From Selaginella moellendorffii (lineage: Eukaryota; Plantae; Lycopodiophyta), in assembly GCF_000143415.4 (NCBI RefSeq), contig NW_003314336.1:570830-634829 (forward strand): a stretch of DNA of 64,000 nucleotides. Reading direction: 5' to 3'. The position numbers were made by a program, and so were the translations under genes. The notes under the pieces are model-generated. The model had not been told where the DNA came from, ran no database searches, and worked only from the letters and a program-made list of their open reading frames with translations. Positions 9,701-52,597 of the stretch are shown here, one piece after another; positions within the stretch are counted from its first letter, which is position 1; the number at the start of each line of letters is the position of its first letter.

Positions 9701-10180
9701 TGAGCACCCATTTAATTCTCCACTCCCAACTTGCATAACCACTCTCAATTACCCTTCGATTATTATAGTTCAATTTTATCCCTTTACTACTTGTTTTTGG
9801 TCTTAAACGTTTCCTTCAGTTATTCTCCTCTAGACTAGGAGGATAAATTTGCACTTTCTATCATGCCTTAGCAAGTATTCTTAAGGATGAACCTACGCGA
9901 TACCCTTGGGAGTGGTTCCTCAATTCAAATATGCTCACCTTGTAATTCCACACATCGGGATTAACATTGTTACTTACATATCTTCATATACTTGTCACTA
10001 GCCTTACCAAAATCTTTTTTGGCTTTGTCCAGATAGACAAACCTTTCCCGTCTCCATAACTTTAAACATTGGATAACACCTTTTATCCATTATTCGCTAG
10101 GGACTTAATCCCTTGGGCATTATCTAATGCCCTCATGACACTAAATACCACTTCTTGTTGTTTTAGAGTGTCTAAATGTT
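6743..10180 (-). mobile_element. Non-autonomous LTR element copy B (LTR part ~6743-7620, PPT ~7621-7632, internal region to 10180)
   Basis: Colinear with copy C over ~10950-14680. Resumes as a short piece at ~16132-16310. Confidence 0.75.
7060..7390 (-). repeat. 12-bp minisatellite (GGACTCCATCTC)n in the LTR of copy B
   Basis: Visible tandem array. Confidence 0.9.
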
Positions 10181-10836
10181 TGTAAGTGACTAATTTTTCC
10201 ATTCTACTTTAATCACTTAACTACACCTCCGACCACTTGGAAGAATCTCACTCACAACTTCCATAAGTCTTATTTTGGACTTAAGGACTTGTTAGCCCCA
10301 AAGAATGGCATCCATGCCACTCAACCATTGCACTTGGTCCAAGTGCTCCATGTGTTCGATCCCATGACCAACACCCCAAGGTACCATTGACATATTAGCC
10401 CATTACGCTAAGGCCATGCCCATTCACTTTAGTCATACCAATGGTCTTACACCATTTACATTACAGTCTCGTCTCTCAAAGATTGGATCATCCGTTCATG
10501 AGTGATCATCCCAGATCCACTCCTTAGCATCCTAAGATGCCCACAGACATGGGGAATAGCCTTCCCCAATATCCCTTTTCCGGTCCCCACCAAGTCCCTT
10601 TCTGCCCACGGCCGTGTTCACCAACACTGCCACTGGATCAAGGCCCACGGACCCGACCACTAAGTCCCACGGCCCTTTGGGACTTCCTCACCACCCGATT
10701 GTATCCTTGGTCACTACACCAGAGGACTACTCCTTTTCCTTTCCACAATCTGCGCCTTTGGGACAACATTTCGGAACACCGTGGCCTTACACGAGCCTCA
10801 TGGGTTCTCTCCCCACCTTCTGCCTTTGAGTGCTCT

Positions 10837-10936
10837 NNNNNNNNNNNNNNNNNNNNNNNNNNNNNNNNNNNNNNNNNNNNNNNNNNNNNNNNNNNNNNNN
10901 NNNNNNNNNNNNNNNNNNNNNNNNNNNNNNNNNNNN
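10837..10936. other. Assembly gap (100 N); other gaps at 56636-56735 and 62215-62388
   Basis: N runs. Confidence 1.
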
Positions 10937-11139
10937 GTCAGTCCGGGTTCCCTTTAGTCTGGGACTTCCCAGTGGGCAGCTCATCACCCAACACTAGGTA
11001 CAGCTTCTTGAGCTAAACTAGTCTTTCCTGGCCAAACTGGCTCCATTGCAGTCCTCCCCCTCTACTATACTTTTGGAGCTCACCAAACCCCCTAGGGTCT
11101 GGGAGACGAACGCTTTGGGCTTTCACCCTCTCAGACTCA

Positions 11140-11695
11140 AACTCGGACTTGGACTCGGACTTGGACTCGGGCTTGGGCTCGGTCTCGGCCTCGGTCTCGG
11201 TCTCGGTCTCGGTCTCAGTCTCGGTCTCGGTCTCGGTCCCGGTCTTGGTCTCGGTCTCGGTCCCGGTCTTGGTCTCGGTCTCGGTCTTGGTCTCGGTCCC
11301 ATCTTGGACTCCATCTCAGACTCTATCTCGGACTCCATCTCGGGTCCATCTCAAACTCCATCTCGGACTCCATCTTGGGTCCATCTCGGACTCCATCTCG
11401 GGTCCATCTCGGAATCCATCTCGGGTCCATCTCGGACTCCATCTTGAACTCCATCTTGGGTCCACCTCAGACTCCATCTCAGACTCCATCTCAGGTCCAC
11501 CTCGGACTCCATCTCAGACTCCATCTCAGGTCCACCTCGGACTCCATCTCGGACTCTATCTCGGGTTCCATCTCAGGTCCATCTCGGTCCATCTTAGACT
11601 CCACCTCGGACTCCAACTTGAGCTCCAACTCGGACTCCATCTCGGACTCCACCTTGGACTCCAACTCGGATCCATCTCAGGTCCATCTCGGACAC
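11140..11695 (-). repeat. Compound microsatellite/minisatellite, (GGTCTC)n then (GGACTCCATCTC)n, in the LTR of copy C
   Basis: Visible tandem arrays. They generate the spurious GL/RP/SV repeat ORFs. Confidence 0.95.
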
Positions 11696-14600
11696 TTCCA
11701 TGTGTCATGTGTTAGTCCTTTTGGGTCCCTTTTTGGAGCCTCGCTTATTGCTCGCTTCGTGTTTGTTCCTCAAGCCCTTTGTTGGGAGTTCCACTCCCGC
11801 TCTCGACTTTTCAAATCGGAGCTTTTGGTCCAAATGTGTTACACTCATTTGACTTTCGCTTCAGCCACTACCACGTGGCACCCTTCCGGCTCCACTTTGG
11901 GGCCTAGGGATTTTGTGTCTCACAACTCCACCATCCATAGACGAAGTTCGATGTCCTCATCGAACGGTAAACCATTTTTATAAAGTAACACCAACATGTA
12001 TTACCTTTTCCATCTTTAGCACCTAGCCAATATTCGTCAATGGTATGACACTGAAAGCTCACCATGCCTTCTCCATCCTCTAAGGCGCATAGCCTCTCTG
12101 ACATAGAGACTCGATCGACCACCTATGGTGGTTCTTTCCTTTTCATTAGTTTAGTTCTTGCTAAACCTGTTAAAGGCACCTCCTCTATTTCAATCCCATT
12201 ACTCACTCCTGAGTAGCCTCAGTTCCCATTGATATAAACTTGCATTCTGGAACTTTTAAATTTGACTTGTTAGAGTCAATTTATTGCACATATTGTGCAA
12301 CTCCACTTCCCCATCTTTGGAAGTTCTCTATTTGAGGGCGCCATCATCCTCTTTCCCATTTTGTGCAACCTTTTGGCACTAAGTTCCAGTTATCCTATTT
12401 CGTGCTAGGATTGTCCACGTCCCTATCATTTGGCTAGTTTACCGCTCCCTGTCATTAGAGCATCTGCCACGATGTTGCTCTTCCTAGGCTTGTACAGAAT
12501 CTCGCAATCAAACTCGACCAAAGCATTGGCCCACTGACCCTATTTCCCCCTGTGACAAGAAGTGTTTCATTGCCACATTGTCCATGTAAACCTTGAAGTG
12601 TCTCCCAAGGTCGGAGCTTCCACTTTCGTCAAATCAAAGCAATTGAGAATCCATCCTTGGAAACACATTGTCTTTCCCACAATTCGTTAGCACCCAACAC
12701 ATTAGTGTTTTTGGCCTAACTTTGTGTTTTGGATTCTTTCCTATGATTCCCATGGCTCTTTTCTTAGCCACTAGTCGTTTGCTCCTATCCTTGATTGTTA
12801 CACCTAACAACATAGAATCATTACCTCCACTCTCAAGGTATCCTTTCAATTCCATAGCAAAGACTTTGCTTTGCCAAGTCCAGAAGGTGTTCACCCTTAA
12901 TACGTCCCTTTAGCATCTTCTGATGTGGGCTCTATTCACGGCCCAACTTTGAGACCCTCCCATGGGTCCCTTGTAGGGATTACTTTCTTTGGACTCACTA
13001 TGCTATCGCATAGTCACAAATCATTTCCCTTAGGTGTTCTTCCCACTTGGTCACCTTGACTAAGCCACACCATCATCAATAGTTCAAACCAACACTTTGA
13101 ACTAGGAACTTTATCCCTTAACCTCACAAGGACTTTATCCTTGTTTTAGCCATAAGATCACCTAGTGATCACACCTAGGCACCTTAATAGGTTTGCCAAT
13201 AGGTATTAAGTCTTCCAAACCTTTAAGTTGTTCACCATGATCCCCCACACTTGGTGGTGCACCCAAGCCAGCCCTTCCAGCTAAGGGTCTATAGCAATTG
13301 AGACTGGGTGTCCCCATTTCATTCACCTCGTCTTTGGTGCCATTTGCATCAAGTGTTCAAATTAGATATGCCGAGCCACACTAAGCAATCTAACTGTGCA
13401 TCATAACTTCAAGGTATCCCTCGCTTGGCAGTGTGCCCAAACCAGTCTCCTCACTGAGAGTCCATGACCACCGAAAAATGAGTGTCCTCATATTCCAAAC
13501 TATCACCACGCCCTAGTGATTTGGAACTTGAACTCAAACACTAAAGGGTTGGGACTCAAACCTAACCTCCATATATGCATCTACAGATAGCATCGCACAG
13601 GATGCCTAGTGTGACTCCCCACGCCGGTGCACTAACATATACTTAAAGCACGCTATAGATCACAGCTTAGGAACCTAGTTCCTTCACGCTGCCAAATCCA
13701 CTCATTTGGCAAATCTATGATCATGCATGGACTCCTCCATGCTCGGCCCCATGGGCCACCCCTTTTGAAGTTAGCACCTTCGACTAAGGGATTTGTTCCC
13801 TTGACTTGCCATTCTCGCTTAGCAAGTCATCCGGCCACCATAACATAGTTCATGCATAAGTGTGAAAGTTCTTAACCATCGACTTTCGTTCAAGCCCTCT
13901 CTTTTAACACTCAGGAACTACTTCCCCAACCTTAATAACCTTGCCTCATGGCCAGCTTCAAGACCACGCTTCTGCTATGCCACTTTGATTTCGCGCGCTC
14001 TAAGATCCATTTACACTTGGCTTTCTAGGTACTTATCTACCTAGAATTGTCTTTAGGAACCTTCAAGGAACTTTGTTCCTTAGTTTGTTAAGGCTTCTCC
14101 TTTGCAAACTCCCTATTCACCATATGGTTTAATATGGATAATTCCACATTTTAGACTCTCCATGACATCGTGGTCGTTAATAATAATTTGCTCAAGCACC
14201 CACTTGATTCTCCACTCCCAACTCGCATAACCACCCTTGGTTATGCCCTTCAATTCCTATAGTTCAGTTCTATCCCTTTACTACTTTGCTTTTTGGCCTT
14301 ATATGTTTCCTTCGGTTATTCTCCTCCAGCCTAGGAGGATAGCTTTGCACCTTCTACTATGCCTTAGCAAGTATTCATAAAAATGAACTTACCCGATAGC
14401 TTAGGGAGCGGTTCCTCAATCTGGGCATGCTCACTTTATAATCCCATACACCGAGATTAATGTTGCTACTTATAGGCCTCTATATGCCCATCACTAGCCT
14501 TGCCAAAATCTTATTTTCGGTTTTGTCCAAATCAGGTAGATGGATTTCTCCCATCTCCAGAACTTTGGACGTTTGGATATTACCTTTTATCCATCATTTG

Positions 14601-16516
14601 CTAGGGTCTTATTCCCTTGGGCCTTATTTATTGCCCTCGCAACACTAAACACCACCTCTTGGCATTCTAGAGTATTTGGGTGTTCCAATGATGGCTTCTT
14701 TGACAATGAACATTTCCTTTTACGACATTGACTTACTATATTGCAACATAAGCAACTTATCCCCGATAAGGGTATGTTTAACTTCTTTATGCCATTAGAA
14801 GTCTTGGATAGTTACCTTCTACTCGTTTAACCAATTACCTGCACCTCTTGCTTAGTTGCTTCATAGTTGTCAAGTCCTACAACTCATTGCTGGTGCTTCC
14901 ACACCTCCATCATTATCTGGGTCACCACACTCTACCACATGCCTTCCAACTTAGGCTATGCCATTTCTATTTCCATTGGGATTCCCTTGGCAAGGGGTTC
15001 TCATGAACCCATCAACATAATCTCAAGGTATCACACCTTGGCCCATTTGGTGTCTCCACACCATCGGCTCCATAAATCTACTTTTGTGACACTTTACACT
15101 TGTGTCTAGGTCTTTGCCAAAGCCAACCCAGTCGTTTCTCATACTAACTATCTGTTAGCACTACACCATAGTGTTCGCACACAACTCTGCACCAAAGTTG
15201 CTTCTTCTAGGAATACCTTTTCCAAGACTTTAGTATGACACATTCTGCCACCCATGAAATACCCACTGTTCTCATACTTGGATTTTATGATCCTCCCCAT
15301 CCTTCGTGAAGCACAACACACCTCAGTCCAAATGCTTTTATCAGTCCTTTAAGACTATTCCTTGACTCCACTTAAGTCATTCAGCCTTTTGGACTTTTCT
15401 TAATCCCTCAACCTATAAGGTTTTACTTTTGAGATGCTAGTTCATTGGAATACAACTTCTTGTATTCATGTCCTACTCACCAGGACCACCATTATAAGTG
15501 TTCTTCCAACACTTAACTATTTTTCGATAATTGTGTGCTACCTTCGCCCGTTAAGATTATCCATCTATATGATGGGAATATCGATTCATCCTCTAAGCAC
15601 ACCCCCAACTCCTAGGGTTGTTCTAGCATTTATTCAAGGTAGCCCGACTACCATTCCAAGGACTTATATCCTCATCCATATTTGACCTCCCACAGTCATT
15701 AATTTTGGTTTCAAATTCATAAGCATCAGCCTTGACTTCATGAGGGTAATTTTGTGACTCCTTTATCGTTTTAGAGTCTTTATCTTCTCTGTGATCCTAA
15801 CAATAATTGTTTACCACAACTACATTAACCAATTTGCTGAATCAAATGCTCATCTGAATCACATCCTAAACTCAATGAGGAAAATCTTGCACTATTCCCA
15901 AGATCCCAAAGTCATTCCATTATTGGCCCTTTTCTATCCACCACCTCATTTACAAGTTCATACATGAACTATAATGGAAAGCCATGTCTTCCCGACCTGC
16001 TACTCCTTGAGGATAGGCCCACTCTTCGGACTTTCCGATGCCAACACCAATGGTGATATACTTGAGCACCAATAAAAGTCGGATTAAGGAATAGCTCCGA
16101 TACCAAATTGTAAGTGACTAATTTTTCCATGAATTGTGTTGTACTTTCTACTTAGTTGTTTCATAGTTCATAAGTTTTACAACTCATTACCAATACTTCC
16201 ACCCCTCCATCATTATTTGGGTCATCACACTTTAACTACATGTCTTTCAGCTTAAATTATGCTATTGCCATTCCCATTTTCATTCCCATTTTCATAGAAT
16301 TCTTTTGGCAAAAAGATACCAAAGAATGTCACTTTATATATTGTTGACAATTAACTAATATATCATACATCTGGATTTAGAGTTTGCTGAAGTTGGTCTT
16401 ATAAAGTTGACAACCCCATTCGAAATATTCCATAATATCATTTTTATTCTGAAACTTCAGGATGTTGGTGGTTACACACACACGAAAAAGAAATCCAGTT
16501 TCACATACATTCATAC

Positions 16517-17221
16517 TCACTGCTTGGCATAGAGAAGCAGGATCTCAGGATTCAGTGCTTGCTTGGGGACCTCGGGATTCATTGCTGTCGGGATTCACTG
16601 CTTGCTTGGGAACCTTGGGATTCAGTGCTGGCTTGGCATAGATAAACAGGCTTTCGGGTTTCACTGCTTGCTTGGCATAGAGTAAGGGGGCTTCGGGATT
16701 CCCTGTTTGCTTGGCATAGAATAAGGGTAAGGGGGCTTCGGGATTCCCTGTTTGCTTGGCATAGAATAAGGGGGCTTCGGGATTCACTGCTTGCTTGGGG
16801 TGGGATTCATTGCTGGCTTGGCATAAAAAAACAGGCTTTCGGGATTCACTGCTTGCTTGGGACCTTGGGATTCATTGCTGTCTTGCATAAAAAACAGGCT
16901 TTCGGGATTCACTGCTTGCTTGGCATAGAGTAAAGGGGCTTCGGGATTCACTGCTTGCTTGGCATAGAATAACGGGGCTTCGGGATTGATTGATTGCTTG
17001 AGTTCTGGAGTTGTGTTCTCTTCTTTAGCCTTCGTTTCTGTAACCTCCTTCAGAATAGATGTTGGGTTCGTTTTTGATTGTTCAACAGCATCTATTTCGG
17101 TTCGGAGAGCTAAAGTCGCCTGAAAAACGAAATAGACAATGTCAAGAGCATCTAGAGCAACTGTAAAACTTACAGTGAAGAACAACACTAGAACGAATGA
17201 AATTGCATGAGTGTTTTGTAT
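16517..17221 (-). pseudogene. Secreted multi-core peptide precursor, burpitide/cyclopeptide-alkaloid type (signal peptide plus ~13-aa repeats); lesions in this copy
   Basis: Exon 1 (17221-17174) reads (I)QNTHAISFVLVLFFT, followed by a 54-nt phase-0 GTAAGT...TTTCAG intron (17173-17120). Exon 2 reads ATLA-LRTE... then repeats of NPE[A/S]-core-AKQAV with cores PLFY, PLLY, LFF(Y), LFFY, PLFY, PLPLFY, PLLY, LFIY, ILLLY, ending in TGA at 16519-16517. The expected start codon reads ATA and there are several small frameshifts. Confidence 0.75.
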
Positions 17222-17831
17222 ATTACAATATGAAGCCACTTTCTTAAATAGTGTTGGAGGTGCCAGAAAGCGCAAAGACCAGAGTAAAATATCATGTGAA
17301 AAGTCAATTCATAGCCAACTTTAGGTTTGCATATGTTTACTGAACTACAAAGAAACTTCTAATTTTATTTTTCTTTTGGAAAAGAGTAAAACTGTTCATT
17401 GATAAATGAAGTTCAATTTTGTCGTGAAGTTCTATCAAAAGACAATATTTCTGCGAGCCTGGCCCACTGTATCAGAATAAATAATAGCACACTATAATGA
17501 CCACATGTTGAATAATGACACACCAACTAACATTGGATCATGGTGCCCACTTGACATATGAACAAGTCACCTAGTAGTGGACAAAATAAAGCATCTAGCT
17601 CAGAGTCATTATAAAATATATAAATAGATTGGTTACCTTGGCTTTAGGTTTAAAGGTATTGCATCAATCATACACCTCTAGAATGCTTCAGATGACATTT
17701 TCTAGATATGTATGGTTTCTGACATGATTCTGCACGTGATGAGTTGACAATCGATCTCCAAGAATAATAAAATAAACCTAAACTGACGGGAAAAACCCTA
17801 ACGTTAGGGTTTCTCGCTTGCATCCGCACTT
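17222..17831. promoter_or_regulatory. Putative bidirectional promoter between the precursor and the dioxygenase
   Basis: 610-bp AT-rich spacer between head-to-head genes. Contains a perfect palindromic double telo-box AAACCCTAACGTTAGGGTTT (17793-17812), a G-box CACGTG (17733-17738) and a site-II-like GGCCCA (~17461). Confidence 0.5.
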
Positions 17832-18821
17832 ATGGAGGACCAGTTTGGTAAGTTCCCTGTTGTTGTGGTGCCAAATCCAAACGAACGAGAATTGCCGCTG
17901 GATGACTTGATATCCAAGGTCCAGGAGCACAAAGCCTGGATCCATGACAAGCTCGCTCGCAATGGAGCATTGCTCTTAAGAGGATTTCCGGTGAAAGACG
18001 CAGCGGATTTTGATCAAGTTATCAAAGCTCTGGACTACAAGACCTTGCATAATCACTTTGGGAGCCAAGACCGGAAACACGTCAAAGGCTCGGTTTACAC
18101 AGCAAATGACGACCTCCCTCTCGAGATTCCAATCGGCTTCCACAACGAAATTACTTATGTAAGCTTGGACAGTAGAGAAATTTGTCAGTCGTGAAGCTTT
18201 CCTTGCAGATGCCCGTCATTCCCGACGTGCTTGTTTTCTACTGCGAGGTTGCACCGCCCCAAGGATGTGGTGGCGCAACGGGCATTGTGAGAGGGGATGC
18301 TGTCTACGAGGACTTGTCCAAAAAATTCCCTAGCTTTCTTCAAGATTTGGAGGACAAGGGAGCGATATATTGCTTCACCGTGCCAGCATCGGAGCAACCA
18401 AAATATGGCAGGTACCACACCACATTCTTCTTCAATGGATAGTTATATGAGATTTCTTTCCTTCAGCAATATGAATGGGTACAAGAGAAAGCAGCTTGAG
18501 AATGGACTCGTGAAGCTCTACCTTGGGCCTTGCCCAGCAATCAAGCAGCTTCCAAGCGGCAAGAAGGCATGGTTTAATGCGATTGGATCAAGCTACGTCC
18601 GTGATTCTAGCGAGCCATATGTTGAGTTTGGAGACGAGACAGCCATGCCCACGGATGCTATCAAAGCCGCCTGTGAAATCATGCAGGAGAAACAATTTGC
18701 TGTGCAGTGGGAGCAAGGGGACGTGCTCATACTGGAAAATTCTCATGTGCTCCATTCTAGACATTCCACTTCCAAGCTCGAGCCTACTCGCAAAATCCTT
18801 GTGTCCATGCTCAAGTATTGA
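17832..18821 (+). CDS. TauD/TfdA-family (clavaminate synthase-like) Fe(II)/2-oxoglutarate dioxygenase, 3 exons (17832-18158, 18209-18411, 18467-18821), 294 aa
   Basis: GALLLRGF, iron motif FHNE (HxE), VFYCEVAP..GGAT, WEQGDVLILEN..VLHSR, RKILVSM. GT-AG introns of 50 and 55 nt splice into one open frame. Confidence 0.9.
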
Positions 18822-18949
18822 TTGTATTGTTTACCGAATCTCTATTTCTCTTGTTAACAAGCTGTTAAACGAAACTCTGCTTTATTAAACTACATTTATT
18901 TTGAAATTGAATAAATGAACGGGCGTAGGCAAAAGCCTTTATCATTTCC

Positions 18950-19912
18950 ATGTCTATTGGCGGTCACGTTTTGCTACATGTCTTGCTTGCGATTTCTCTC
19001 GTGTATCATGTGGTCAGCTTCAAGAGCCTCTTAGTCATGAGCTCTCGCTCATTCTCAACTCTTACTTTTGTTTTCGACGCAGGGGTGTCTCCTTCCTGGC
19101 TCAATACTGGAGAGGCTGTCGCCCTTGGATGATGCCTCCAAAATGCGCATCAAGCGGGAAATCCATGCTTCCGGCACCATGCCACTCGAGTCGTGCAAAA
19201 AAAGCCGGCTTCCTGTGTGCCACCACATTGATCATCACCGCCAGCATCATCACCTTGCCAGGAATGGAATCTAACCTTGGAATTTGATCCCCCAAACTTT
19301 TCTTCCAGATGAACACGCTTGTCGGCTGCCACCGCCTCTCCTCTGAGACAACTCAATTCCTCCCAGTATGTTCACGCATTCACTCCTTGAGCCAGTTCTT
19401 GGAACCATGGGTTTCTCCCGACTGCTGCCAACGATGCAAATCCTGATGCAGTCTTCTGTATCAAAGGCAATGTGGGACAGCTTGAGCATGTGTTCTATGG
19501 ATGCCAGCATCAAGGACGAGATCAAGGCGTGCCATGTCTCCGTGAAGACTATCCTGGAGCAAGCGTCTTCGATAGTCAGCAGGCCCGATTTGAAGCATGT
19601 CATAAACACTGTGAGCGATGTGGAGGGGGAATTTGAGGTGGTAGAAAAGGCTATGGTTGCTACAAATGGGACTCTAGCTTGTCATCCCATGACATTTCCA
19701 TATGCACTCTACATGTGCCATACAATTCGCTTATGGTGACACTGAAACCATATTCACAATCTTGCAGCAAGCTTGTGGAGGTTCCTGCAGTTTGTCACTT
19801 GCACACCTCAGGCTTTGACCCATCCCACATTTCATTCAAAGTGCTACACATGAAGCTTGGTGTGGGAGAAGTCTGCCACTGGCTCTTAGAGTGTCACTTT
19901 GTTTGGTATTAA
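18950..19912 (+). pseudogene. BURP-domain protein (candidate split burpitide cyclase) with signal peptide; disrupted by stops and frameshifts
   Basis: Exon 1 (18950-19012) reads MSIGGHVLLHVLLAISLVYHV, followed by a phase-0 intron 19013-19082. The BURP signature CH-x10-CH...CH-x25-CH-x8-W is seen as ACHPMTFPYALYMCH ... AVCHLHTSGFDPSHISFKVLHMKLGVGEVCHWLLECHFVW, plus DEIKAC and KLFFQ. Stops at 19272 and 19344 and a frameshift near 19730. Confidence 0.9.
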
Positions 19913-35559: not shown

Positions 35560-38500
35560 CTTTTTCATTCATCTTCATGGTAGATCAGCAATCTCCTCCT
35601 TTGACTCTAGAGCAGTAGTTGGTTCAATTGTTTGATGCCATGCGCTTGCAATTGAACAACCAAACTCAATTGATGGCAGCATTCACGGCACGTGGTTCAA
35701 CTCCTTCTGCTCTTGGTGCCAATCTTGCGTTCGGCTGGAGTTCTTTTGTGAGAATCTTGGGGATGATGTGTACCATTGGTTCGATCACTTCACGGTGATT
35801 GCCACATATCATTCTTGGGATGATGCTCGACGTTTGCGTGAGTTCCCCACGTGTTTCTAAGGGACAGCGTTGTAGTGGTACAATGGATTGAGCATAGCCA
35901 CTCATGGGGATTGGAGTGTTCTTCTAGACGCTTCAAATGTGCCTTTGAATATGCTGGCGATTGTGATGATGCCTTCCAAAAATTGCATTGTTTTCGCCAA
36001 GGGCCATCTGAGTCGGTGATGCAATTTGGTGTTCGTTTCTGAAGTCTTTTGCTTCGTGTAGAGCCTGATATGTCAGAGCGGATCAAGCTAGAAATGTTGT
36101 GGCCAGCACTTCGTCAAAATCTTATCGGCCTTGTGCATGCCCTTGCTCCTGCCACCCTTGACGATGCTCTTCGCTTGGCACAACGTTATAAGACGTTGCC
36201 TCTTCCACTTCTCGCTGCACGTCCTTCAGCTCCACTTCCTATGAGTGATGGTCCTATTCTAATGGAGGTTGATGCTGCTGCTACTTGAGTCCAAGGACAA
36301 GGGTGAGGACGTGGTTGTGGCCATGATGTTCGTTGCTGGGCATGTGATGAAGTTGGTCATACTTATCGGCGTTATCGACGCTTTCCGGATTGGCAACCTC
36401 CATTTCTTGGGTGGAGACCTTGGCGTCAGCAACGTCCCGTTGGTGCTACTGCGGTGAAAGGTTTGGACACCGAGGTGCATCTGGGAAATGAGGAGTCGCG
36501 CGAGTAATAGAGGGACCTTGCGCGAATAAGTTAGTGACCCCCCCCCATCTTTCTTTCGGGAGTATCATCAAGGGGTCCACTCGGCACCGGTTCATCCAGT
36601 GTCTATTTTCCAAGCTCGTTTTTATAACAAGAGGTCTCCTATTATTCTCTTTGTGTTAGTTGATATAGGTTCGAGTTTATCTTCTATTGCTGGACCTGTT
36701 GCCACACGTTGTCATCTACACTTGTGTCATGCGGCGGATCCAGTTTTCATTCTTTATGGCAACGGCCGTACACATGCATGTGCACGAGATGAGGCGGACC
36801 TGGTTGTGCTTGTGGGCGATCTCGAGCTTGAGTTGCAGTTGTTATGGGTGGTGCTGAGTCAAGCTTTTGGCCTCATTCTTGGTATGAATTGGTTGCAACG
36901 CAATCATGCCAAGTGTGACTTTGAGGGTTCTCCCCCTTGTCTCATACTTCCTTATGTTTCATTAATTCCTCTCACTTCCGTACCTTTTCGTCCCTTTACT
37001 TCTACCTCTGTTTCCATTACTTTTGTTCCCCCACTATTTCCTCCTATGTTTCCATTTTGTTCTGCTCTTCCCTTTTCCGATCCCTCCAATGATCTTGGTG
37101 TTGCAGCTGTTGACTGGCTCATGAAGGAGTATTCTGATCTTTTTGAATTTGACCTATCGTCTGGGGCCAAGATTGCCACACATCATCCAATTCCAACTAG
37201 GGATGCTCGTCCAGTCAAGGTTCTTGTTCATTGTCGGTCACCCAAGGAGATCAAGATTTTACATGCAAACGTCAAGGAAATGTTGGAGAAGGGTGTTATT
37301 CGGAAGTTGCGGAGTCCTTGAGCATGTGAACCTCATCTTGTGACGAAGCCTGATGGGAGTATTCGTTTCTGCATCGACTATCGTTCGTTAAATGAAGTGA
37401 CGATCCTAGATGTGTACCCTCTTCCTCACACTGCTAATTTCTTGGATCGTCTAGGGCAAAGTTGTTGGTTCACCAAGCTAGATCTTGCTTGTGGGTACGG
37501 GCAAGTACCGATGGCCGAAGAAAATATTCTTAAGACTGCTTTTCGTACACCATTTGGTTTGTACGAGTTCTTGGTGATGCTGTTTGGTTTGAACAATGCT
37601 CCAACAACTTTCCAACGGATGATGGACGAGGTTCTTTGTGATATGCCAGAGGTGATTGTTGACTTCATTGATGATGTCTTGATTCACTCGGAGGGGACGT
37701 GGGAGAAGCACATTCATGATGTATGTAAAGTTTGCATGAAGGTTTGCAAGTTGATCTTGACAAACTTGTAGCTGTTCTAAAGTTCCCTATTCCGAAGTGT
37801 GTGAATGATGTGCAATGCTTCCTGGGCAAGGTGCAGTATCTCGGTCGTTTTGTGGATCATCTTTCTGATCGCACTGCAGCGTTGCAAGCGTTGTTGAAGT
37901 CATCAACATCATCTTTCATCTGGTCTTCAGATTGTGAGCGGGCGTTTGTGGATCTCAAAGAGTTGTTGACGACTCCTTTGGTTTTGGCATATCCTGACTA
38001 CACTCGACCTTTTATTTTGCATGTAGATGCTTTTGATATTGGTCTTGGAGGTGTGTTGATGCAAGAAAGTTCGAGTGTGCCTGGTCAGCGTCATTTTATT
38101 GCATATATAAGTCGTACGTTACAACCAGTAGAGGTGAACTACCCTACGACAGAAAAGGAGTGTTTAGCGGCAGTTTGGGGTTTCAAGAAACTTCATGCAT
38201 ATCTACATGGTTCTTGGATGTTATTTGAAGGTGACCATGCTGCTGTTACTTCATTATTGAAACGGAAGAACTTGGTTGGTCATACTGCTCGGTGGGATTT
38301 GAAGCTTCAAATATATAATTTTGATGTTGTTCATCGCCTAGGGAGTTCTATGGCTAATGCTGATGCCCTTTCTCGAGCTCCTCTTCCTTCTCCACTCTTT
38401 TCTCATATTTCTGATGAGTTTGTTGTTCTAGCATTTATGGATTTTCTAAACGAGGATTCTGTGCCAACGGCAGTTGCTGTACTTGACGTTCAGTGTCCAC

Positions 38501-40370
38501 AAGGTGCAGAGCAAGATCTACCTTCTCTTGATGAGGTTTGCGAGGCTCAAAAGATTGAGCCGTGGATTCAAAGACTTCGAGATGCATTTGAGAATCCTGG
38601 ATCACTGCCTTTTCAGCATTTATATTCTCAATGTCATCTTGAAGATGGCCTTCTTTATTTTGTGGGGACAGATCCTGATGATCATTTACGGTTGGTGATG
38701 CTTTCTATCTTTATTCCGTGGTTTCTCCATGCCTACCATGATTCTCCTGTTCTAGGGTGGCATATGGGACATTGTTGTGTGACCGAGAAGCTGCGCAGGT
38801 CTTTCTATTAGCCGGAGATGCGATGTGATATTATCCGGTATGTGCATAGCTGCGTTTGGTGCCAAGCTTGTAATACTCCCCCTTGTGCTATGGAAGGACG
38901 GTTGGAGCCAATTGCAGTTTCCCGTCTGTTTGAGTTGGTGGCGTTTGATCTTATGGGACCTTTTCCACAGTCGACTGTTGGCAATGAATATGTTATTATT
39001 GCTTCTAACTACTTGACTCGTTGGGTGGAAATTGGTGATCTTGCTAGTGCCTCGGCAACTGTTGTTGGATACTTCCTCCTCAATTGAGTGATTTTCTAGC
39101 ATTCTTGTCCAGAGCGGATTCTTTCGGATAATGGTCTTGCATTTATGGTTGAGGCATTTCATGTTTTGACATCTCGGTTGGGGATACGCCACACTTTCAT
39201 GAGTGCTTATCATCTACAATCAGATGGTCTGGTGGAACGGCTCATTTGGACATTCAAAGGGATGATTGTGAAATATGTGAACTTTCAACATTCAAATTGG
39301 GATGGTTATTTGCCGTCTCTTCAGTATGCCTATGTCACAAGGGTGTAGAGTTCTGTTGGTGCTTCACCATATAAACTTCTATATAGTCATGATCTAATAT
39401 TACCAATGGAACTGGGTTTACCTTCGCGATTGCCACGAGCTACCGATGTTAGGTTGTGAGATTAGTATTTGACGAGCATTTTTTCACTTATCCAAAAAGA
39501 GTTTGCTGAACACTTAGGCCACATACAATTGGGACAACAATGGCATTACAACTCCCATCATCAATCACTTGTGGAGTACAAAGTGAATGACTTGGTGTTA
39601 GTCTATTTTCCCTATCTTATGATACGTGGTTTATCTAAAGGGCTTTATGCTCAGTGGAAAGGACCATATCAGGTGTTGTGGCAAGTTGGATCACAAGTTT
39701 ATGAAGTTTGACATGACGTCTAGCAAACCAATCCTCCAGAAATTGTGCATGTGTAGCAATTGAAACACTTCGTACAAAGGGATCATGAACAACTGATACC
39801 ACCTACAAATCTACCGATGCCTCCTCCTAACATTCCTTTAGATCCAGGCCCATCTACAAGAGAACCTTGATGGTCTTCCATTATTTCGAGAGAAGGGGAT
39901 GATGTGAGGTCCAAGTGTATGGCTATGATATTGTATATTATAATTAGTGTAATAGGATTTTGGTAGCCGTTAGATTGGTTTTAATTCGGACCACTTGCTT
40001 CTGTATATAAGCTAGGGTTTTGGGCTAATTGATATGCACATTTCAGTATTCCCTTTCCATATTCCATGCACTCACAATGCTAATTACTCATATTTTTTGT
40101 GTTCCAATTAATAAATTATGTATGTTGGTTCTTGAAAAATATTACAAAGTTTGATGTTAAAAACCAGTTAAAGTTTTTGTAGATAGGCTTATTCCTTTTA
40201 TTTTGCTTTAACTCTTTCCTTTCTTCTTGCCTTCATACCTTTTTGTTAACATCTATGTTTGCATTTATATTATTGATTGAGTGCTGGCTTGTGCTTCTTC
40301 CAAATCTTGTTCATTCTCCTTTTAAATTTGTTTTCCAACTGCCTATGTTTAAGTTCATGCAAGAAATTTA
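35560..40370 (+). mobile_element. Ty3/gypsy element gag-PR-RT-RH-INT (stops and frameshifts), PPT ~39887-39900, 3' LTR from 39902
   Basis: LVDIGSS (protease), [77 protein letters not shown] is followed by TGTGAGG. The LTR right end is uncertain. Confidence 0.92.
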
Positions 40371-47665: not shown

Positions 47666-50600
47666 TGAACGTGTATGTACATTCCCCATGTCCCAATGGG
47701 ACTAATACAAAAAATGGGCGTGCCGCCCTCTCAATGAGCTACTCTACGTGATCCTCATATGCCGCAGCTAGACCTAGTCCTGGAGTAGAAGTGGACGTGG
47801 TCGTCTCGAGCGAATCATGTCGATGTCCAAGTCTCCCCCACGAGCTGACCTTAGAACAGAGTCTGGGGGGCGCCATTGCCAGCGAATCTCGCCACCTCCC
47901 AATTTGCCGAAGCATGGGAGCCACCTAGATCTCCACTCCTCGAGCTGCCTCGGTTTCGCCCACTCTTTCAGGATGGTGTAGTGAAGACGCACCGCTGCAA
48001 GAGTGAGTCTCCACCATGATACCACCACTGCCGATATTCTCGCTTGTTGCCCATCAAAGCGACAGTGGTTCCGCGCCTCCCAAAGTGCCTGCAGTCCTGT
48101 TGCCCTCCAAATGGACCAGCGCTCTTGGCCCAACGCCTCCCAGATGGACATCCCAACTTCAGCCCCTGTCACGTCCCACCGGACTCGCATGTTCCATCGG
48201 TGCCGTCTGTAGCAGCGAATATGCCTCCAAGCTGGACCAATGGCTGGGCCTCTAGCTCCCTCAAACCAGTGGAGGATATCCCCACTCCGAGCCTCAAACT
48301 CTGGAATGTCTCCGAGTTCCTGCGTTGCCTTGAAGATCTGTCGCCAAACTTCTCTCGCCACATCGCATTCCCATAGGACATGTCGCGCTGTCTCCAGCTC
48401 GCCACACTCCTTGCACCGTCGGCATGCTTCTTCCTGGAACCGCTGTCCTACCGGCAGCCCGTTATTTGCCACCAACCAAGAGGTGGCCTTGACTTTCTCC
48501 TGTACCGGTAGTTTCCAGAACGCAAGCGTGTTGCCCACCACCTGATTTGCTTCAACTCCTTGCTCGATCCATTTCTTCAAGAGCTTGGGGATCTCCCCTC
48601 GGGCCTCCTCCCTGCTGGTCAAGAGACCATCCCTTGCTTCCTTGACGCCGAAGGAGAAGAAGCTCCTCGCTCCTCGTTTCCATGCTGCGGGGTCCCAATC
48701 CAGATCCTTGATGAGCTGCTGTCGCCACCATCTAAGAATGCCTTCCCCCTCTAGTGCAGCCAACGATTGAACCACCACCGATTGCTTCGGAGCCTGTCGT
48801 ATTACTCGAATCCTACCCTTGACCTCGTCATCCGTCACCATTGGCATGACCTGTTCGTCCCCTGCTGGCAACAGCATGTCGCCTCTCAAGACTCAAAAAG
48901 GACGCCCAACATTTTGGTCTGGAGACACAACGAACCATACCTCCACATCCCTGTCCTCCCAAGCTGGTGTTGGGGCCGTAAACGCCCATGTCCAGGCCCC
49001 CAAGCTAACTCGTTCCCTATCTGGCTCCATGTCCCGTTGCAGAGCCACAAAGTCTCCAGATTTGAGACAACGCCTAGGCCAGAGCTGCCCCTGCTTCGCC
49101 TCACTCACTGCTCTGATAATGCGAAGAAGATCAAGGTGGACTTTCCTCCACCGTCCCGGGTTAAAGACCTGCATATGCCTCGTAGTCTTCCTCTTGTCCT
49201 TGTCGAGAACCCGCACCAGCTGCTTGAGAGTTCGGAAGCCTGCGCTATGTAGCTTTCTCCAGATTGTGTAGTGGTCCTCCCTGCCCAGCGTCCTATCATC
49301 CAGTTTGAAGAGGTCGTTGAAGAACAGGGGCTGGTTCAGCCAGTCCTCCGCTCGCCTTGGCAATTCCCTGCTGACTGGAAACACGCTCCATAACCGGAGA
49401 AACCCCTGGACTAGAGTGCCGCCCTTGACTACTTGTTTCGGCCCCTCGGCAAAGAGCCAACGTGGATCTTCTTCCCACGGTCTTGCAGTGTTGTGCTTGG
49501 GCCGGATTGCCAACAAGTTCTGCCTAAACATGAGTCTCCAAGGTTGATTACCTAGTTGAAGGCCCATGAGGAGGATTTTGTACCGTAGCGCCTTCGCCAT
49601 GTCACTCGGATCGATTACTCCAAGTCCTCCCAAGACTCGCGGACGTGCTGTAGATTGCCATGCGACCTTGGCCATGCTCCTCCCTGTGACCAGAGCGCCC
49701 CGCCACAAATACTGACGGACCATTGTGCGTACCTTTCTAAGAGTGCGTTCTGGAACAGGCCAGATGGAGAGGTGGTACCAGATGCCGGGCAGAATGATGC
49801 TCCTAGCGACTACCACTCTCGCTGGCAAGCCGAGTTTCCGGGGAGCCCACTTCTGGATTGACGTTCGTACCCGTCGGAGCAAAGTGTCATCCTGAAGTGC
49901 TGCATTGAACCGAGTACCAACCTGGATCCCCAGGTACCTAGCGTCTTCTCCTGGTTTGAGCCATTGGAAGCCGATGTCCTGCCCCCAAGATTCGATGCCT
50001 GGTCGCCCCCAATTTATGCCCACTGATTTGTTCCAGTTAATTGCTGCACCAGCCGCGAGGTTGAACGTCTCCAACGCCTTCTTAGCTGCATCCATGTTCT
50101 CCTTAGTCGCAAGTAGGAACAAGGCAGTGTCGTCCGCAAAAGCACCATCAAGGAGTTCCCGAGACACCCTTGTGGTTCCCGGAAGTTGCTGTCTCGCAGC
50201 CGGCAGTGTGAGTCCTTTAATGCGTCCGCCTTCCGCTAGAAACGTGCCCAGGGCCTCAGCCACAATCAGAAAAAGATAGGGTGCTAGTGGACACCCTTGG
50301 CATACTGAATGTCCCAGCTGGAAATTCGGTCCCGTCTCGCCATTGATTGTGACTCTGCTTGCGGCTCCTCGGTATAGTAATGAGATCCTAGCGACCATCT
50401 CTCTCGAGATGCCGATCGTGTTCATGCACTCCTCTAGGAACCTCCAGTCCACCCGATCGTAGGCCTTCTCGAAGTCCAATAGCCATGCTGCAGTTTGTTG
50501 GTTAGAGATCTCTGCCCATCTCTGAGCCAGCAGGTACGTCCAGATGTTTTCTGCGATTTGCCGCCCTGGAACAAACCCTGTCTGCTGCTCCCGGATGATC

Positions 50601-52597
50601 AGCGGCATGACAGCTTGGAGCTTGAGGGTCATTGCTTTGGCATAGACCTTGTAGGACGTGTTGAGCATGGTGATTGGCCTCCAATTCTTCAGCTCCTGCA
50701 GGTCCCCCCTCTTTGGAATAAGCGCAATCTGGCCCTCAAGGATCTCACGAGGCAAGGTCCCATCACATTGAGCATCCCACCATGCTTGTAGCAGCAGTGG
50801 GCCTATGGTTTCCCAGTGCTCCTCGAAGAAAATGGGCAAGAGGCCATCGATACCTGGCTGCTTGTCGTTGCTGAGCTTCCCGAGCGCTTCCCGAAGCTCC
50901 TCCAATGTGAAGTCCGTCTTCAGTGAGTCGTGCCACTCATGGGGGACTCGCTGGGGAAGGGACGCAAGCACTTCCACCGCCGCCCTTTCCCTCTTTGGAG
51001 TCCACTGCTGGGCCGTATATAGAAGTTGGTAAAACTCCTGGGCAAGCTGTTGCATCCCTTGTTGGTCCTCGACGACTCGCCCGTCACTGTGCTTCAGTCC
51101 TAGAATGGGAGGAGAGTCCATCACTGGCCTGATTCCCCTAAAGAAAGCCTTGTTGAGAAGGCGTTCATTTAGGGCCCATCCATCTTCCATGGCCCGGACG
51201 CCCTTGCTCCGTGCAGCGTACTCCATGTCACGTAGCTCGGCTTCACGTTCATCCAGTATTGTTTGCCACTTGAACTCATCTTGCGTGTTCAGCAACATCC
51301 TGTGTGCTGCTGCGACCTTCTTCCTGGCCAGTCTAAGGTCCTTCATCACCGCCCCTTTGAGATCCTTCTGGCGCGCCCGGAGCTTCTATGAGCAAGACAA
51401 GAGCACAGGGATCAGCCCCAGCTTGTTCTGCGCAAGAGCGTCGTGTATAAGCCCAATCGCCACCGGGTCTCGCAGCGTGGCTCTAGTGATTGATCGCTGG
51501 ACCGCTGTCCCTTTGTCCCTTTGGAGCTGGATCACGCATCTGAGGGGGTCGTGATCTGAGAAGGAGGCAAATCCCAGCCACGTTTTAAGGCTACCCCCAT
51601 CCTGCCGTATGCGAGATGAGGCGTAAATCCGGTCCAGTCTCGACTGGGAGGATACTGTCTGTCGCCTTGTAAAAGGGTGAGCATGAGGTGTGAATCCCGC
51701 AGCATGCTGAAGGTCCATGAGCCCCAGTATGTCCATGAGCTGACTCCACTGCTTCTGTTCACGTGGCTGAATTGTTTCCTGCATACCCCTGCGATCACAG
51801 ACGTCCTCGACCATGTTGAAATCTCCCAGGACCAGCCATTCATCTGCTTGCCCCTGGGCAGACTGTAACACACTCAGCCAGAATTCTGCACGTCTCCCTT
51901 TCTTCGTTGGTGCATAGACGTTGATTATCCCCACCCGTCCAAAGTGGAGGTGAAGGACAAGCAATTGAGCCTTTCCTGGGACGAGGACAAGGTGGTTTCA
52001 TACTCGAGCAGACCATTTGGTTGAGACTACCACTGCTGTGCCCCCTCCTGGTCTGGCCACTGCTTGCGTGGCCGGGTTCCACCAGAGCCGTCCCCTCATT
52101 CCAAAGGTGTAGTCTGGGGCCACAGTCATTTTGTGCTCTTGCAAGCATAGGATGTCGATATCTCCTTCTAAGCTGATCTCCCGGATGTGGGACTTGAGCT
52201 GCGCCCTTTTGTTGAGTCGACTGCCGGTCTAGCTGAGTCCCTGGCAGTTCCAGGTGACGAGCGTGAGAGTTGTCATGGAGCCACGTACTTCCAAGAAAGT
52301 GAGGAGTTACGGGGTCTCGCCCTCCATTCTGTGGAGATGGTCCACACCACAGTCATCTTCCCCCTGTGCTTCGTCCAGGAGAAGCCTCGGACAGTGTACT
52401 TCGCAAAACCCGTCCACTCAGTGATAGCACTCTCCATGCGTGTGTGGTAGTCTCCAATAGTGACGACCTCTGGGAAGGCTGTGTTCCCGCGGCACATCAG
52501 CTAGTCTCCCGCCTCTGTGGGACTTAATTCCCGCTTAGGGGGAATCCACCTGACCGCCATTCCTATTGTTCGAGGGAGGACCGGCTGGAAGCCATCT
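47666..52597 (-). mobile_element. L1/Tx1-type LINE, 5'-truncated, 18-bp TSD
   Basis: TGGCTTTTGGCATTTCGC at 47648-47665 and 52598-52615. Clearly more GC- and CpG-rich than its host. Confidence 0.93.
47774..52276 (-). pseudogene. LINE ORF2 (APE endonuclease, RT, zf-RVT) with a few frameshifts and stops
   Basis: MTTLTLVTWNCQGL, INVYAP, LGDFN, SRLDRIY, SDH, PGIDG, NWRPITMLN, LDFEKAYDRV, QGCPLAPYLF, FADD, CKECGELETARHVLWEC. Confidence 0.93.

What the first reader, a model, noticed from the sequence alone, without database searches (positions are those of the whole stretch)
16517..19912. Compact three-gene split-burpitide (cyclopeptide-alkaloid-type RiPP) cluster: precursor, Fe/2OG dioxygenase and BURP cyclase
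Seen: within 3.4 kb, surrounded by transposons, lie three genes. They are a signal-peptide gene with nine hydrophobic xxxY cores in constant spacers, a head-to-head TauD/CAS-like dioxygenase 610 bp away, and a BURP gene starting 128 bp after the dioxygenase stop, with no cores of its own. The ORF track hides the system because precursor and BURP are split by introns and frameshifts. Established: BURP domains are Cu-dependent peptide cyclases that crosslink Tyr/Trp to sp3 carbons, either in cis or on stand-alone repeat precursors. Fused BURP precursors make selanines in Selaginella kraussiana. 14-membered cyclopeptide alkaloids derive from xxxY cores and need oxidative decarboxylation of the C-terminal Tyr. 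Inference: this is a physically clustered split pathway (substrate, cyclase, tailoring oxygenase), apparently in a non-seed plant. I recall a comparable clustered Fe/2OG decarboxylase in jujube; that recollection needs checking and would make this either a deep homologue or a convergent cluster.
Basis: partly seen in the sequence, partly recalled or inferred. Interest (0 to 1): 0.95.

Follow-up and report, generated by a model that had tools for sequence, protein, structure and literature searches.

The report
Decayed spikemoss cyclic-peptide cassette with intact dioxygenase
In the spikemoss Selaginella moellendorffii, a gene pair for ring-shaped peptides (a repeat precursor and a BURP cyclase) is broken in both copies of the chromosome. 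An iron/2-oxoglutarate dioxygenase gene between them is intact, so this is a relic, not a working three-gene pathway.

Summary
The three genes are real and correctly identified. The window is S. moellendorffii scaffold GL377640.1.

- **Precursor-like gene (minus strand):** it has ten 13-22 aa units with cores PLFY, PLLY, LFFY, LFIY and LLLY. Its ATG is out of frame with the signal exon, and the array is frameshifted twice.
- **BURP gene:** it has all its Cys-His (CH) motifs and no cores of its own. It carries three frameshifts and two stop codons.
- **Second copy (GL377676.1):** it is probably the other haplotype. It shares three BURP lesions and three precursor lesions and has further private ones. 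The lesions are therefore real decay, not assembly error.
- **TauD-family dioxygenase (SELMODRAFT_425605, 294 aa, 3 exons):** it is intact and free of indels in both copies.
- **Intact cassettes elsewhere:** about 70 kb around the intact precursor/BURP cassettes in this genome holds no TauD gene. The one TauD paralogue whose neighbourhood was read has no BURP neighbour.
- **Jujube decarboxylase ZjuDC:** it belongs to a different 2OG-oxygenase class (DOXC) and is not clustered with ZjuBURP.

The dioxygenase-burpitide link rests on one adjacency. I put the chance that it tailors cyclopeptides at about 15%.

The scan found the same trio before on other DNA (s1-332849, probably the other haplotype) and intact cassettes (s1-380456, s1-358591).

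The parts
16517..17119 (-). Precursor exon 2: leader (ATLALRTEIDAVEQ...) followed by ten repeat units with xxxY cores. The natural stop TGA is at 16519-16517. The reading frame is broken.
   Evidence: homology to an intact S. moellendorffii precursor, E 2e-11.
17120..17173 (-). 54-nt GT-AG intron of the precursor. It is at the same position as the intron of the intact paralogous precursors.
17174..17208 (-). Signal-peptide exon of the precursor. It is 35 nt where the intact paralogue has 36. The ATG (17208-17206) is out of frame with the hydrophobic segment (AISFVLVLFFT). Both copies share this.
16797..16801 (-). Shared precursor lesion: 4 nt are missing from the spacer of unit 4. The frame shifts and a premature stop follows at 16786-16784.
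   Evidence: the same in L002.
16581..16595 (-). Shared precursor lesion: unit 9 has lost its core, and a second frameshift follows.
16858..16890 (-). Window-only lesion: 3 nt are missing in all from unit 3. The Tyr of the LFFY core and the spacer are scrambled. The other copy has this unit intact.
17832..18821 (+). Intact TauD/TfdA-family Fe(II)/2OG dioxygenase gene of 294 aa (SELMODRAFT_425605). Exons are 17832-18158, 18209-18411 and 18467-18821; introns are 50 and 55 nt.
18950..19912 (+). BURP-domain cyclase pseudogene. It has a signal exon (18950-19012), a 70-nt intron (19013-19082), a His-rich linker and a BURP domain with all CH motifs. It has no core repeats.
19260..19260 (+). BURP frameshift found in the window only (5 nt missing relative to the other copy).
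19285..19287 (+). BURP in-frame stop codon, between the conserved SAMES and FFQ motifs. Both copies share it.
19327..19328 (+). BURP frameshift between the LVG and PPPL motifs. Both copies share it.
19344..19346 (+). BURP stop codon at the position of a conserved Trp. It is in the window only; the other copy has Trp.
19722..19723 (+). BURP frameshift between the second and third CH motifs. Both copies share it.

Best explanation
This locus is the relic of a split-burpitide (cyclopeptide-alkaloid-type) cassette. Such a cassette has a secreted multi-core precursor and a stand-alone copper-dependent BURP cyclase that would ether-link the core's Tyr to a residue's beta-carbon. Both genes were already inactivated before the two sequenced copies of the locus diverged, and both have kept decaying since.

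Between them lies an intact gene for a fast-evolving member of a Selaginella-specific branch of the plant At3g21360 (TauD/TfdA) Fe(II)/2OG dioxygenase family. It keeps its metal- and 2OG-binding residues and has been held free of indels. Its present function therefore does not depend on the dead neighbours.

Shown here: the gene identities, the lesions and which are shared, the intactness of the dioxygenase, and the absence of TauD genes from the intact cassettes. Inferred: the cyclase chemistry (by family), and that the dioxygenase is most likely a bystander or a later insertion rather than a pathway member.
For: - Genes and families.
- BURP lesions against the intact paralogue P0013: three frameshifts and two stops in the window. 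One stop and two frameshifts sit at the same positions in the second copy, L002, which has two private frameshifts.
- Precursor: the out-of-frame ATG, the 4-nt loss and the core loss are shared; other changes are private.
- L002 is collinear with the window and 1-2% diverged in the genes. It is probably the other haplotype.
- TauD has 0 indels in 990 nt between the copies, against 13 in the surrounding 2,594 nt. About 5 would be expected (Poisson P about 0.007).
- TauD has 0 disabling lesions in its 885 coding nt, against about 13 in about 1.5 kb of BURP plus precursor. About 7 would be expected (P below 0.001).
- The triad H104/E106/H273 and the 2OG ligands T133/R285 are conserved.
- The model has a TauD fold; the best match is At3g21360, 1Y0Z, E 1.5e-26.
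- There is no TauD-like sequence in L003, L005, L006 or L007, which hold the intact cassettes.
- The neighbourhood of paralogue P0002 has no BURP.
Against: - The dioxygenase sits exactly between the two halves of a cassette that is normally head-to-head and about 280 bp apart. That is not a random-looking position.
- It is the most divergent member of its subfamily and lacks a segment of about 20 residues next to the substrate pocket. A recruited, neofunctionalised tailoring enzyme would look like this.
- TauD-family enzymes IsnB and PvcB carry out oxidative decarboxylation of a tyrosine derivative, as described in PMC12871766. They appear among the structural neighbours, though only at generic family level.
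- dN/dS between the two copies is 0.63 from only 10 substitutions, which gives no power.
- RefSeq annotates a 146-aa product (P0011) from the first part of the precursor, so residual expression cannot be excluded.
Confidence: 0.8

Rival explanations
1. The dioxygenase is, or was, a burpitide-tailoring enzyme recruited into the cassette. It would carry out C-terminal Tyr oxidative decarboxylation or a hydroxylation. It would now act in trans on cyclic peptides made by the intact cassettes elsewhere in the genome, which would explain why it survives the death of its neighbours.
For: - Its position, nested between precursor and BURP.
- A long branch and loss of the residues that bind sulfoquinovose in the related bacterial enzyme (PMC12951627).
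- Within-family precedent for decarboxylation-assisted desaturation of a Tyr derivative (IsnB/PvcB; and the discussion of PMC12871766).
- In jujube, a precursor and the tailoring enzymes work from unlinked loci.
Against: - There is only one adjacency, present in two copies of the same locus.
- No TauD lies in about 70 kb around the intact cassettes.
- The loss of the Gln and Trp equivalents is shared with the paralogues P0002, P0003 and P0005. P0002's neighbourhood is ordinary; those of P0003 and P0005 could not be read.
- The selanines known from Selaginella keep their C-terminal carboxylate (PMC12871766).
- ZjuDC belongs to another enzyme class.
Confidence: 0.15
2. The cluster is functional, and the frameshifts and stops are sequencing or assembly errors, or are spliced out.
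For: Selaginella introns are very short (50-70 nt here), so small interruptions could in principle be introns.
Against: - Three BURP lesions and three precursor lesions recur at the same positions in a second, independently assembled scaffold, which also has lesions of its own.
- The interval at the CH2-CH3 break that could be read as an intron is only 32 nt, and removing it would delete conserved residues.
- The in-frame stop lies between two conserved motifs read in one frame.
- The neighbouring TauD gene has no such errors.
Confidence: 0.03
3. The truncated precursor is still made (RefSeq model LOC112341075, 146 aa, with three intact cores in the window) and is cyclised in trans by an intact BURP encoded elsewhere.
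For: - An open frame runs from an upstream ATG (17823) through a GT-AG intron into the hydrophobic segment and the first units.
- Jujube ZjuPrec-FIPFY works without a co-localised BURP.
Against: - The model's first exon has no counterpart in intact precursors.
- No such gene is called in the second copy.
- The hydrophobic segment is displaced 23 residues from the N-terminus.
- The closest intact BURP is only 56% identical to the dead one, and its own precursors have different spacers.
Confidence: 0.08

Closest known systems
Split burpitide cassettes of eudicots (ArbA2/ArbB2 of Coffea arabica; ZjuPrec-FPIY/ZjuBURP of Ziziphus jujuba)
   Same: A stand-alone BURP gene without cores lies next to a gene for a secreted protein with many short Tyr-terminated cores in constant flanks. 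Four-residue x-L/F-x-Y cores fit 14-membered cyclopeptide alkaloids; FLLY and LLIY are the cores proposed for sanjoinine A and adouetine X (PMC12871766).
   Different: The host is a lycophyte; the published survey found the system 'nearly ubiquitous among eudicots' and does not mention Selaginella (PMC10107690). The precursor does not match Pfam at E up to 0.1. Both genes are pseudogenes, and a dioxygenase gene lies between them.
Intact precursor/BURP cassettes of S. moellendorffii (GL377587.1 and GL377593.1; BURP P0013 and relatives)
   Same: The same gene pair in the same orientation. The intron positions match in the signal exons. The repeat register is homologous (KQA-NPE[A/S]-xxxY; E 2e-11). 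The BURP is 56% identical.
   Different: Those cassettes have open frames, arrays of up to 20 cores (FVFY, ILLY, FFLY, FFFY), a head-to-head spacer of about 280 bp, and no dioxygenase. Their repeat unit is 15 aa, against 13 or 22 aa here.
SkrBURP of Selaginella kraussiana (fused burpitide cyclase, selanines)
   Same: Same genus. The BURP domain is related (36% identity over the query piece). The cores are hydrophobic xLxY with a Tyr-O to Leu-C-beta crosslink.
   Different: SkrBURP carries its cores in the same polypeptide. The similarity of the core-repeat region to the window precursor is not significant (E 0.1).
ZjuDC, the Fe/2OG oxidative decarboxylase of jujube cyclopeptide alkaloids
   Same: It is an Fe(II)/2OG-dependent oxygenase, and it acts on cyclic xxxY peptides.
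   Different: Its authors compare it with DAO/GA2ox, DPS and H6H, which by my own knowledge are DOXC-class enzymes, not TauD/TfdA. It lies on chromosome 1, unlinked to ZjuBURP on chromosome 9 (PMC12871766). No activity is known for the window's enzyme.
At3g21360 (PDB 1Y0Z) and the bacterial sulfoquinovose dioxygenase MaSqoD (PDB 9YUT)
   Same: Best sequence matches (E 7e-44 and 4e-30); 1Y0Z is also the best structural match, while 9YUT is not among the 50 matches listed there. The His-x-Glu...His triad and the 2OG-binding residues are the same.
   Different: Gln120 of MaSqoD is Tyr here. The segment holding Trp253 is absent, and a further segment of about 20 residues after the exon 2/3 junction is missing. 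The substrate is therefore probably not sulfoquinovose (PMC12951627).
IsnB/PvcB (TauD-family enzymes of vinyl-isonitrile pathways)
   Same: Same Pfam family. They carry out decarboxylation-assisted desaturation of an N-substituted tyrosine, which is formally the reaction that makes a styrylamine.
   Different: Identity is only 15-19%, and the structural similarity is no better than to taurine dioxygenases. They are bacterial and act on small molecules.

Membership tests
Split burpitide cassette (stand-alone BURP cyclase + separate precursor) | BURP domain with the conserved Cys-His motifs | tested here: met
   PF03181 matches at E 1.7e-16 and 4.1e-14. The pattern CH-X10-CH ... CH-X25-CH-X8-W can be read.
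Split burpitide cassette (stand-alone BURP cyclase + separate precursor) | Cyclase gene has an open reading frame | tested here: not met
   Three frameshifts and two stop codons against the intact paralogue P0013. Three of these are shared with the second copy.
Split burpitide cassette (stand-alone BURP cyclase + separate precursor) | No core repeats inside the BURP protein | tested here: met
   The N-terminal part is a signal peptide plus a His-rich linker, as in P0013.
Split burpitide cassette (stand-alone BURP cyclase + separate precursor) | Adjacent gene for a secreted protein with repeated Tyr- or Trp-containing cores in conserved flanks | tested here: met
   Ten units, eight with intact xxxY cores, with constant AKQAV-NPE[A/S] flanks and a signal-type exon. 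It is homologous to intact precursors.
Split burpitide cassette (stand-alone BURP cyclase + separate precursor) | Precursor gene has an open reading frame starting at its signal peptide | tested here: not met
   The ATG is out of frame with the signal exon, and the array has two frameshifts. Both copies share these.
Split burpitide cassette (stand-alone BURP cyclase + separate precursor) | Copper-dependent crosslinking of the precursor (-2 Da per core) | not testable with these tools
   This needs expression and mass spectrometry.
ZjuDC-type cyclopeptide-alkaloid decarboxylase | Belongs to the plant DOXC class of 2OG oxygenases, like the enzymes ZjuDC is compared with | tested here: not met
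   The window enzyme matches only PF02668 (TauD). ZjuDC is compared with DAO/GA2ox, DPS and H6H. The ZjuDC sequence itself was not available to align.
ZjuDC-type cyclopeptide-alkaloid decarboxylase | Oxidative decarboxylation of the C-terminal Tyr of a cyclic core (-46 Da) | not testable with these tools
   This needs an enzyme assay.
TauD/TfdA family, plant At3g21360 subfamily | PF02668 domain and TauD-type jelly-roll fold | tested here: met
   The model has pLDDT 74.6 and pTM 0.78; its best match is 1Y0Z at E 1.5e-26.
TauD/TfdA family, plant At3g21360 subfamily | 2-His-1-carboxylate triad and 2OG-binding Thr and Arg | tested here: met
   H273, T133 and R285 are invariant in alignment A1. H104 and E106 are kept in every row that covers the motif; P0005 and P0009 have a gap there.
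Sulfoquinovose dioxygenase (SqoD) | Substrate-binding side chains Gln120 and Trp253 of MaSqoD | tested here: not met
   Gln120 aligns with Tyr109. The YTGW segment is absent (residues from PMC12951627).

The most novel reading that the evidence does not exclude
The divergent TauD-family dioxygenase was recruited into a lycophyte burpitide cassette as a peptide-tailoring enzyme. It would, for example, convert the C-terminal Tyr of cyclic xxxY peptides into a styrylamine, as IsnB/PvcB do with tyrosine isonitrile. This would be a solution convergent with the DOXC-type ZjuDC of jujube. The enzyme would still serve the intact cassettes in trans.
Probability: 0.13. Interest if true: 0.8.

Novelty: new member of a known kind. 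Interest (0 to 1): 0.35.

Why it matters
Split burpitide cassettes have been described in eudicots. S. moellendorffii carries both intact cassettes and this decayed one, so the two-gene route and its turnover by birth and death are also found in a lycophyte.

The practical value of this locus is small, because it cannot make a product. It does supply one cheap, testable candidate. This is a soluble Fe/2OG enzyme of a family not yet linked to plant RiPPs, lying inside a cassette, at a time when tailoring enzymes of cyclopeptide alkaloids are only beginning to be found (ZjuDC and ZjuNMT, 2026 preprint).

It is also a caution for genome mining: adjacency in a gene-poor, transposon-rich region is weak evidence of a pathway.

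Tried and rejected
- **Assembly error as the cause of the frameshifts.** Rejected, because the lesions recur in the second scaffold.
- **The CH2-CH3 break as an intron.** Rejected: the interval is 32 nt and would remove conserved residues.
- **A short hidden exon as the reason for the missing segment of about 20 residues in the dioxygenase.** Rejected: intron 2 is only 55 nt, and the annotated protein of both copies has the same 294 residues.
- **Remnants of the 280-bp head-to-head promoter of intact cassettes on either side of the TauD gene.** No similarity above shuffled controls (z -1.3 and -0.4; the positive control gave z 80). The 'insertion into the promoter' idea stays untested.
- **Close orthologues of the dioxygenase or precursor in other species.** None was found. 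The best dioxygenase relatives are S. moellendorffii paralogues at no more than 42% identity, and the precursor finds only itself.
- **PDB sequence search with the BURP piece.** No BURP chain matched at E up to 1.
- **dN/dS between the two dioxygenase copies.** It is 0.63 from 7 non-synonymous and 3 synonymous changes, which is uninformative.
- **Genomic context of paralogues P0003 and P0005.** Not on record.
- **The search of earlier findings by sequence.** Blank.
Full report
**Where the window comes from.** The dioxygenase exon piece finds a 100% identical 294-aa protein, SELMODRAFT_425605 of Selaginella moellendorffii. It is encoded on GL377640.1 at 578,661-599,650. The exon/intron structure has 50-70-nt GT-AG introns, which fits this genome.

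- **Repeat array.** On the minus strand, Tandem Repeats Finder reports a period-39 array of 9.5 copies and related rows at 16548-17000.
- **Units and cores.** Reading the frames gives ten units. The short unit is NPE[A/S]-xxxY-AKQAV (13 aa). The long unit is NPES-xxxY-AKPA[L/M]NPKVPKQAV (22 aa). The cores in order are PLFY, PLLY, LFF- (Tyr lost), LFFY, PLFY, PLPLFY, PLLY, LFIY, a unit whose core is deleted, and LLLY.
- **Upstream part.** A leader, a 54-nt intron (17120-17173) and a hydrophobic signal-type exon lie upstream.
- **Homology.** The same layout, with a 12-codon signal exon, an intron of about 50 nt and an exon starting A-A-A-A-L-R-T, is seen in intact S. moellendorffii precursors. 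The two repeat regions align in register at E 2e-11.
- **Dioxygenase.** It is head-to-head with the precursor, 623 bp away. It is an intact three-exon gene (17832-18158, 18209-18411, 18467-18821) that matches PF02668 in all three exon pieces.
- **BURP gene.** It starts at 18950, which is 128 bp after the dioxygenase stop. It matches PF03181 (E 1.7e-16 and 4.1e-14). It has a signal exon, a 70-nt intron, a His-rich linker without cores, and all the Cys-His motifs.

**The cyclase and the precursor are pseudogenes.** I aligned the BURP DNA to its closest intact relative with an aligner that allows frameshifts. That relative is P0013, a 314-aa stand-alone 'BNM2C-like' BURP of the same species, 56% identical. 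The window shows these lesions:

- a frameshift at about 19260;
- an in-frame stop at 19285-19287, between the conserved SAMES and FFQ motifs;
- a frameshift at about 19327;
- a stop at 19344-19346 in place of a conserved Trp;
- a frameshift at about 19722, between the second and third CH motifs.

The precursor has these lesions:

- its ATG is one nucleotide out of register with the signal exon (35 nt against 36 in the intact paralogue);
- 4 nt are lost in the spacer of unit 4, giving a premature stop at 16786-16784;
- unit 9 has lost its core, with a second frameshift.

**A second copy settles whether these are errors.** The 90% cluster of the dioxygenase has a second member, SELMODRAFT_185510, at the end of scaffold GL377676.1 (locus L002).

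- L002 is collinear with the window over the three genes and both flanks. Divergence is 1.1-2.3% in the genes. About 6 kb (10171-16125) is present only in the window.
- The published assembly is known, from my own knowledge, to hold both haplotypes. L002 is most likely the allele.
- L002 has the same BURP stop and the same two BURP frameshifts. It lacks the window's 5-nt loss and its Trp-to-stop change, and it has two single-base losses of its own.
- L002 shares the three precursor lesions, has unit 3 intact, lacks the window's 45-nt duplication, and has a Tyr-to-Cys change in one core.
- The genes were therefore dead before the two copies diverged, and decay has continued in each.

**The dioxygenase behaves differently.**

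- Between the two copies it has no indel in 990 nt, while the surrounding 2,594 nt have 13. About 5 would be expected (Poisson P about 0.007).
- It has no disabling lesion in 885 coding nt, while BURP plus precursor carry about 13 in about 1.5 kb. About 7 would be expected (P below 0.001).
- dN/dS between the copies is 0.63, but this rests on ten substitutions and is uninformative.
- The protein keeps the facial triad (H104, E106, H273) and the 2OG ligands (T133, R285).
- Its AlphaFold model (pLDDT 74.6, pTM 0.78) is closest to At3g21360 (1Y0Z, E 1.5e-26).

**What kind of dioxygenase it is.**

- At3g21360 is reported as the closest structural homologue of the bacterial sulfoquinovose dioxygenase MaSqoD, which binds its substrate with Gln120 and Trp253 (PMC12951627).
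- In the window's enzyme the Gln position is Tyr109 and the YTGW segment is missing.
- These two differences are shared with the other S. moellendorffii paralogues (P0002, P0003, P0005). P0002 lies between ordinary genes without any BURP; the neighbourhoods of P0003 and P0005 were not on record.
- The window's protein is the longest branch of that Selaginella clade. It additionally lacks about 20 residues after the exon 2/3 junction. Intron 2 is only 55 nt, so no hidden exon explains this.

**Is the dioxygenase part of the burpitide system?** I read about 70 kb around the intact cassettes: GL377587.1 at 793.6-814.7 kb and GL377593.1 at 1,067-1,116 kb (loci L003, L005, L006, L007).

- These stretches hold precursor/BURP pairs, head-to-head and about 280 bp apart, interspersed with RabGAP and PPR genes. 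Four pairs lie on GL377593.1 and two on the GL377587.1 stretch. Their open arrays hold up to 20 FVFY, ILLY, FFLY or FFFY cores.
- tBLASTn with three TauD paralogues finds nothing better than E 3.5.
- The link therefore rests on one adjacency, seen in two copies of one locus, whose burpitide genes are dead.

In favour of a link:

- The striking position between the two halves of a cassette.
- The divergence of the enzyme.
- TauD-family IsnB/PvcB perform decarboxylation-assisted desaturation of a tyrosine derivative. PMC12871766 cites this chemistry as precedent. These enzymes appear among the structural neighbours, but only at generic family level.

Against a link:

- The selanines of Selaginella keep their carboxylate.
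- No paper in the searchable library connects TauD-type enzymes with plant cyclopeptides.

**The jujube comparison.**

- ZjuDC is an Fe/2OG oxidative decarboxylase of cyclic xxxY peptides.
- It is compared by its authors with DAO/GA2ox, deoxypodophyllotoxin synthase and H6H, that is, the plant DOXC class.
- It lies on chromosome 1, while ZjuBURP and its precursor lie on chromosome 9. The authors state that the pathway is not entirely clustered.
The two enzymes are not family homologues.

**Comparison with what is known.**

- Split cassettes were reported as nearly ubiquitous among eudicots, and Selaginella is not mentioned (PMC10107690).
- The one characterised Selaginella burpitide cyclase, SkrBURP, is of the fused type.
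- Split cassettes in a lycophyte therefore appear undescribed in the literature I could search. The scan had already noted them on other DNA of this genome: intact cassettes (s1-380456, s1-358591) and the same decayed trio (s1-332849, probably L002).

**Verdict.** This is a correct observation of a relic. It is a new, decayed member of a known kind of cassette, with an intact neighbouring dioxygenase whose involvement is unproven and, on present evidence, unlikely (about 15%).

Noticed in passing
window 10171-16125: About 6 kb is present in the window and absent from the second copy (L002 8186-8342). It has internal direct repeats (9802-10180 against 14298-14684, 79% identical) and a long TCGG-rich array of 12- and 23-nt periods at 11117-11675. 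It is probably a haplotype-specific transposon or duplication.
   Followed up: partly
window 36599-38811, 47774-51349, 56896-57558, 62189-62893: These ORFs match retroelement families: gypsy-type protease and RNase H, a LINE-type reverse transcriptase with zf-RVT, gag, and a further RT fragment. This confirms the transposon-rich setting.
   Followed up: partly
window 17788-17823 (minus strand): The RefSeq model LOC112341075 (146 aa) starts the precursor at an ATG only 8 nt from the dioxygenase ATG on the other strand. It splices over 544 nt into the region just upstream of the signal segment. No equivalent gene is called in the second copy, so the first exon looks like a prediction artefact.
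   Followed up: partly
proteins P0002, P0003, P0005 (S. moellendorffii) against P0004, P0006-P0009: S. moellendorffii has its own branch of the At3g21360 family. That branch has Tyr in place of the sulfonate-binding Gln of bacterial SqoD and lacks the YTGW Trp. The At3g21360-type plant proteins aligned here keep the Trp, and those that cover the Gln position keep the Gln, so they may be sulfoquinovose dioxygenases. Whether S. moellendorffii also has a canonical copy was not determined.
   Followed up: partly
protein P0005 (SELMODRAFT_449058): This near-identical partner of P0002 lacks 25 residues, including the His-x-Glu iron-binding motif. It is either a defective allele or a faulty gene model.
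   Followed up: no
L003 6108-7005 and 11995-12645; L005 3017-3702 and 12085-12733; L006 2877-3200 and 12115-12873: The arrays of intact cassettes also contain BURP fragments and degraded copies between the working pairs. Birth-and-death turnover of this gene pair therefore seems common in the genome.
   Followed up: no
window 16682-16772: A perfect 45-nt tandem duplication, absent from the second copy, creates a PLPLFY unit. This shows that the array still changes by unit slippage after the gene's death.
   Followed up: yes
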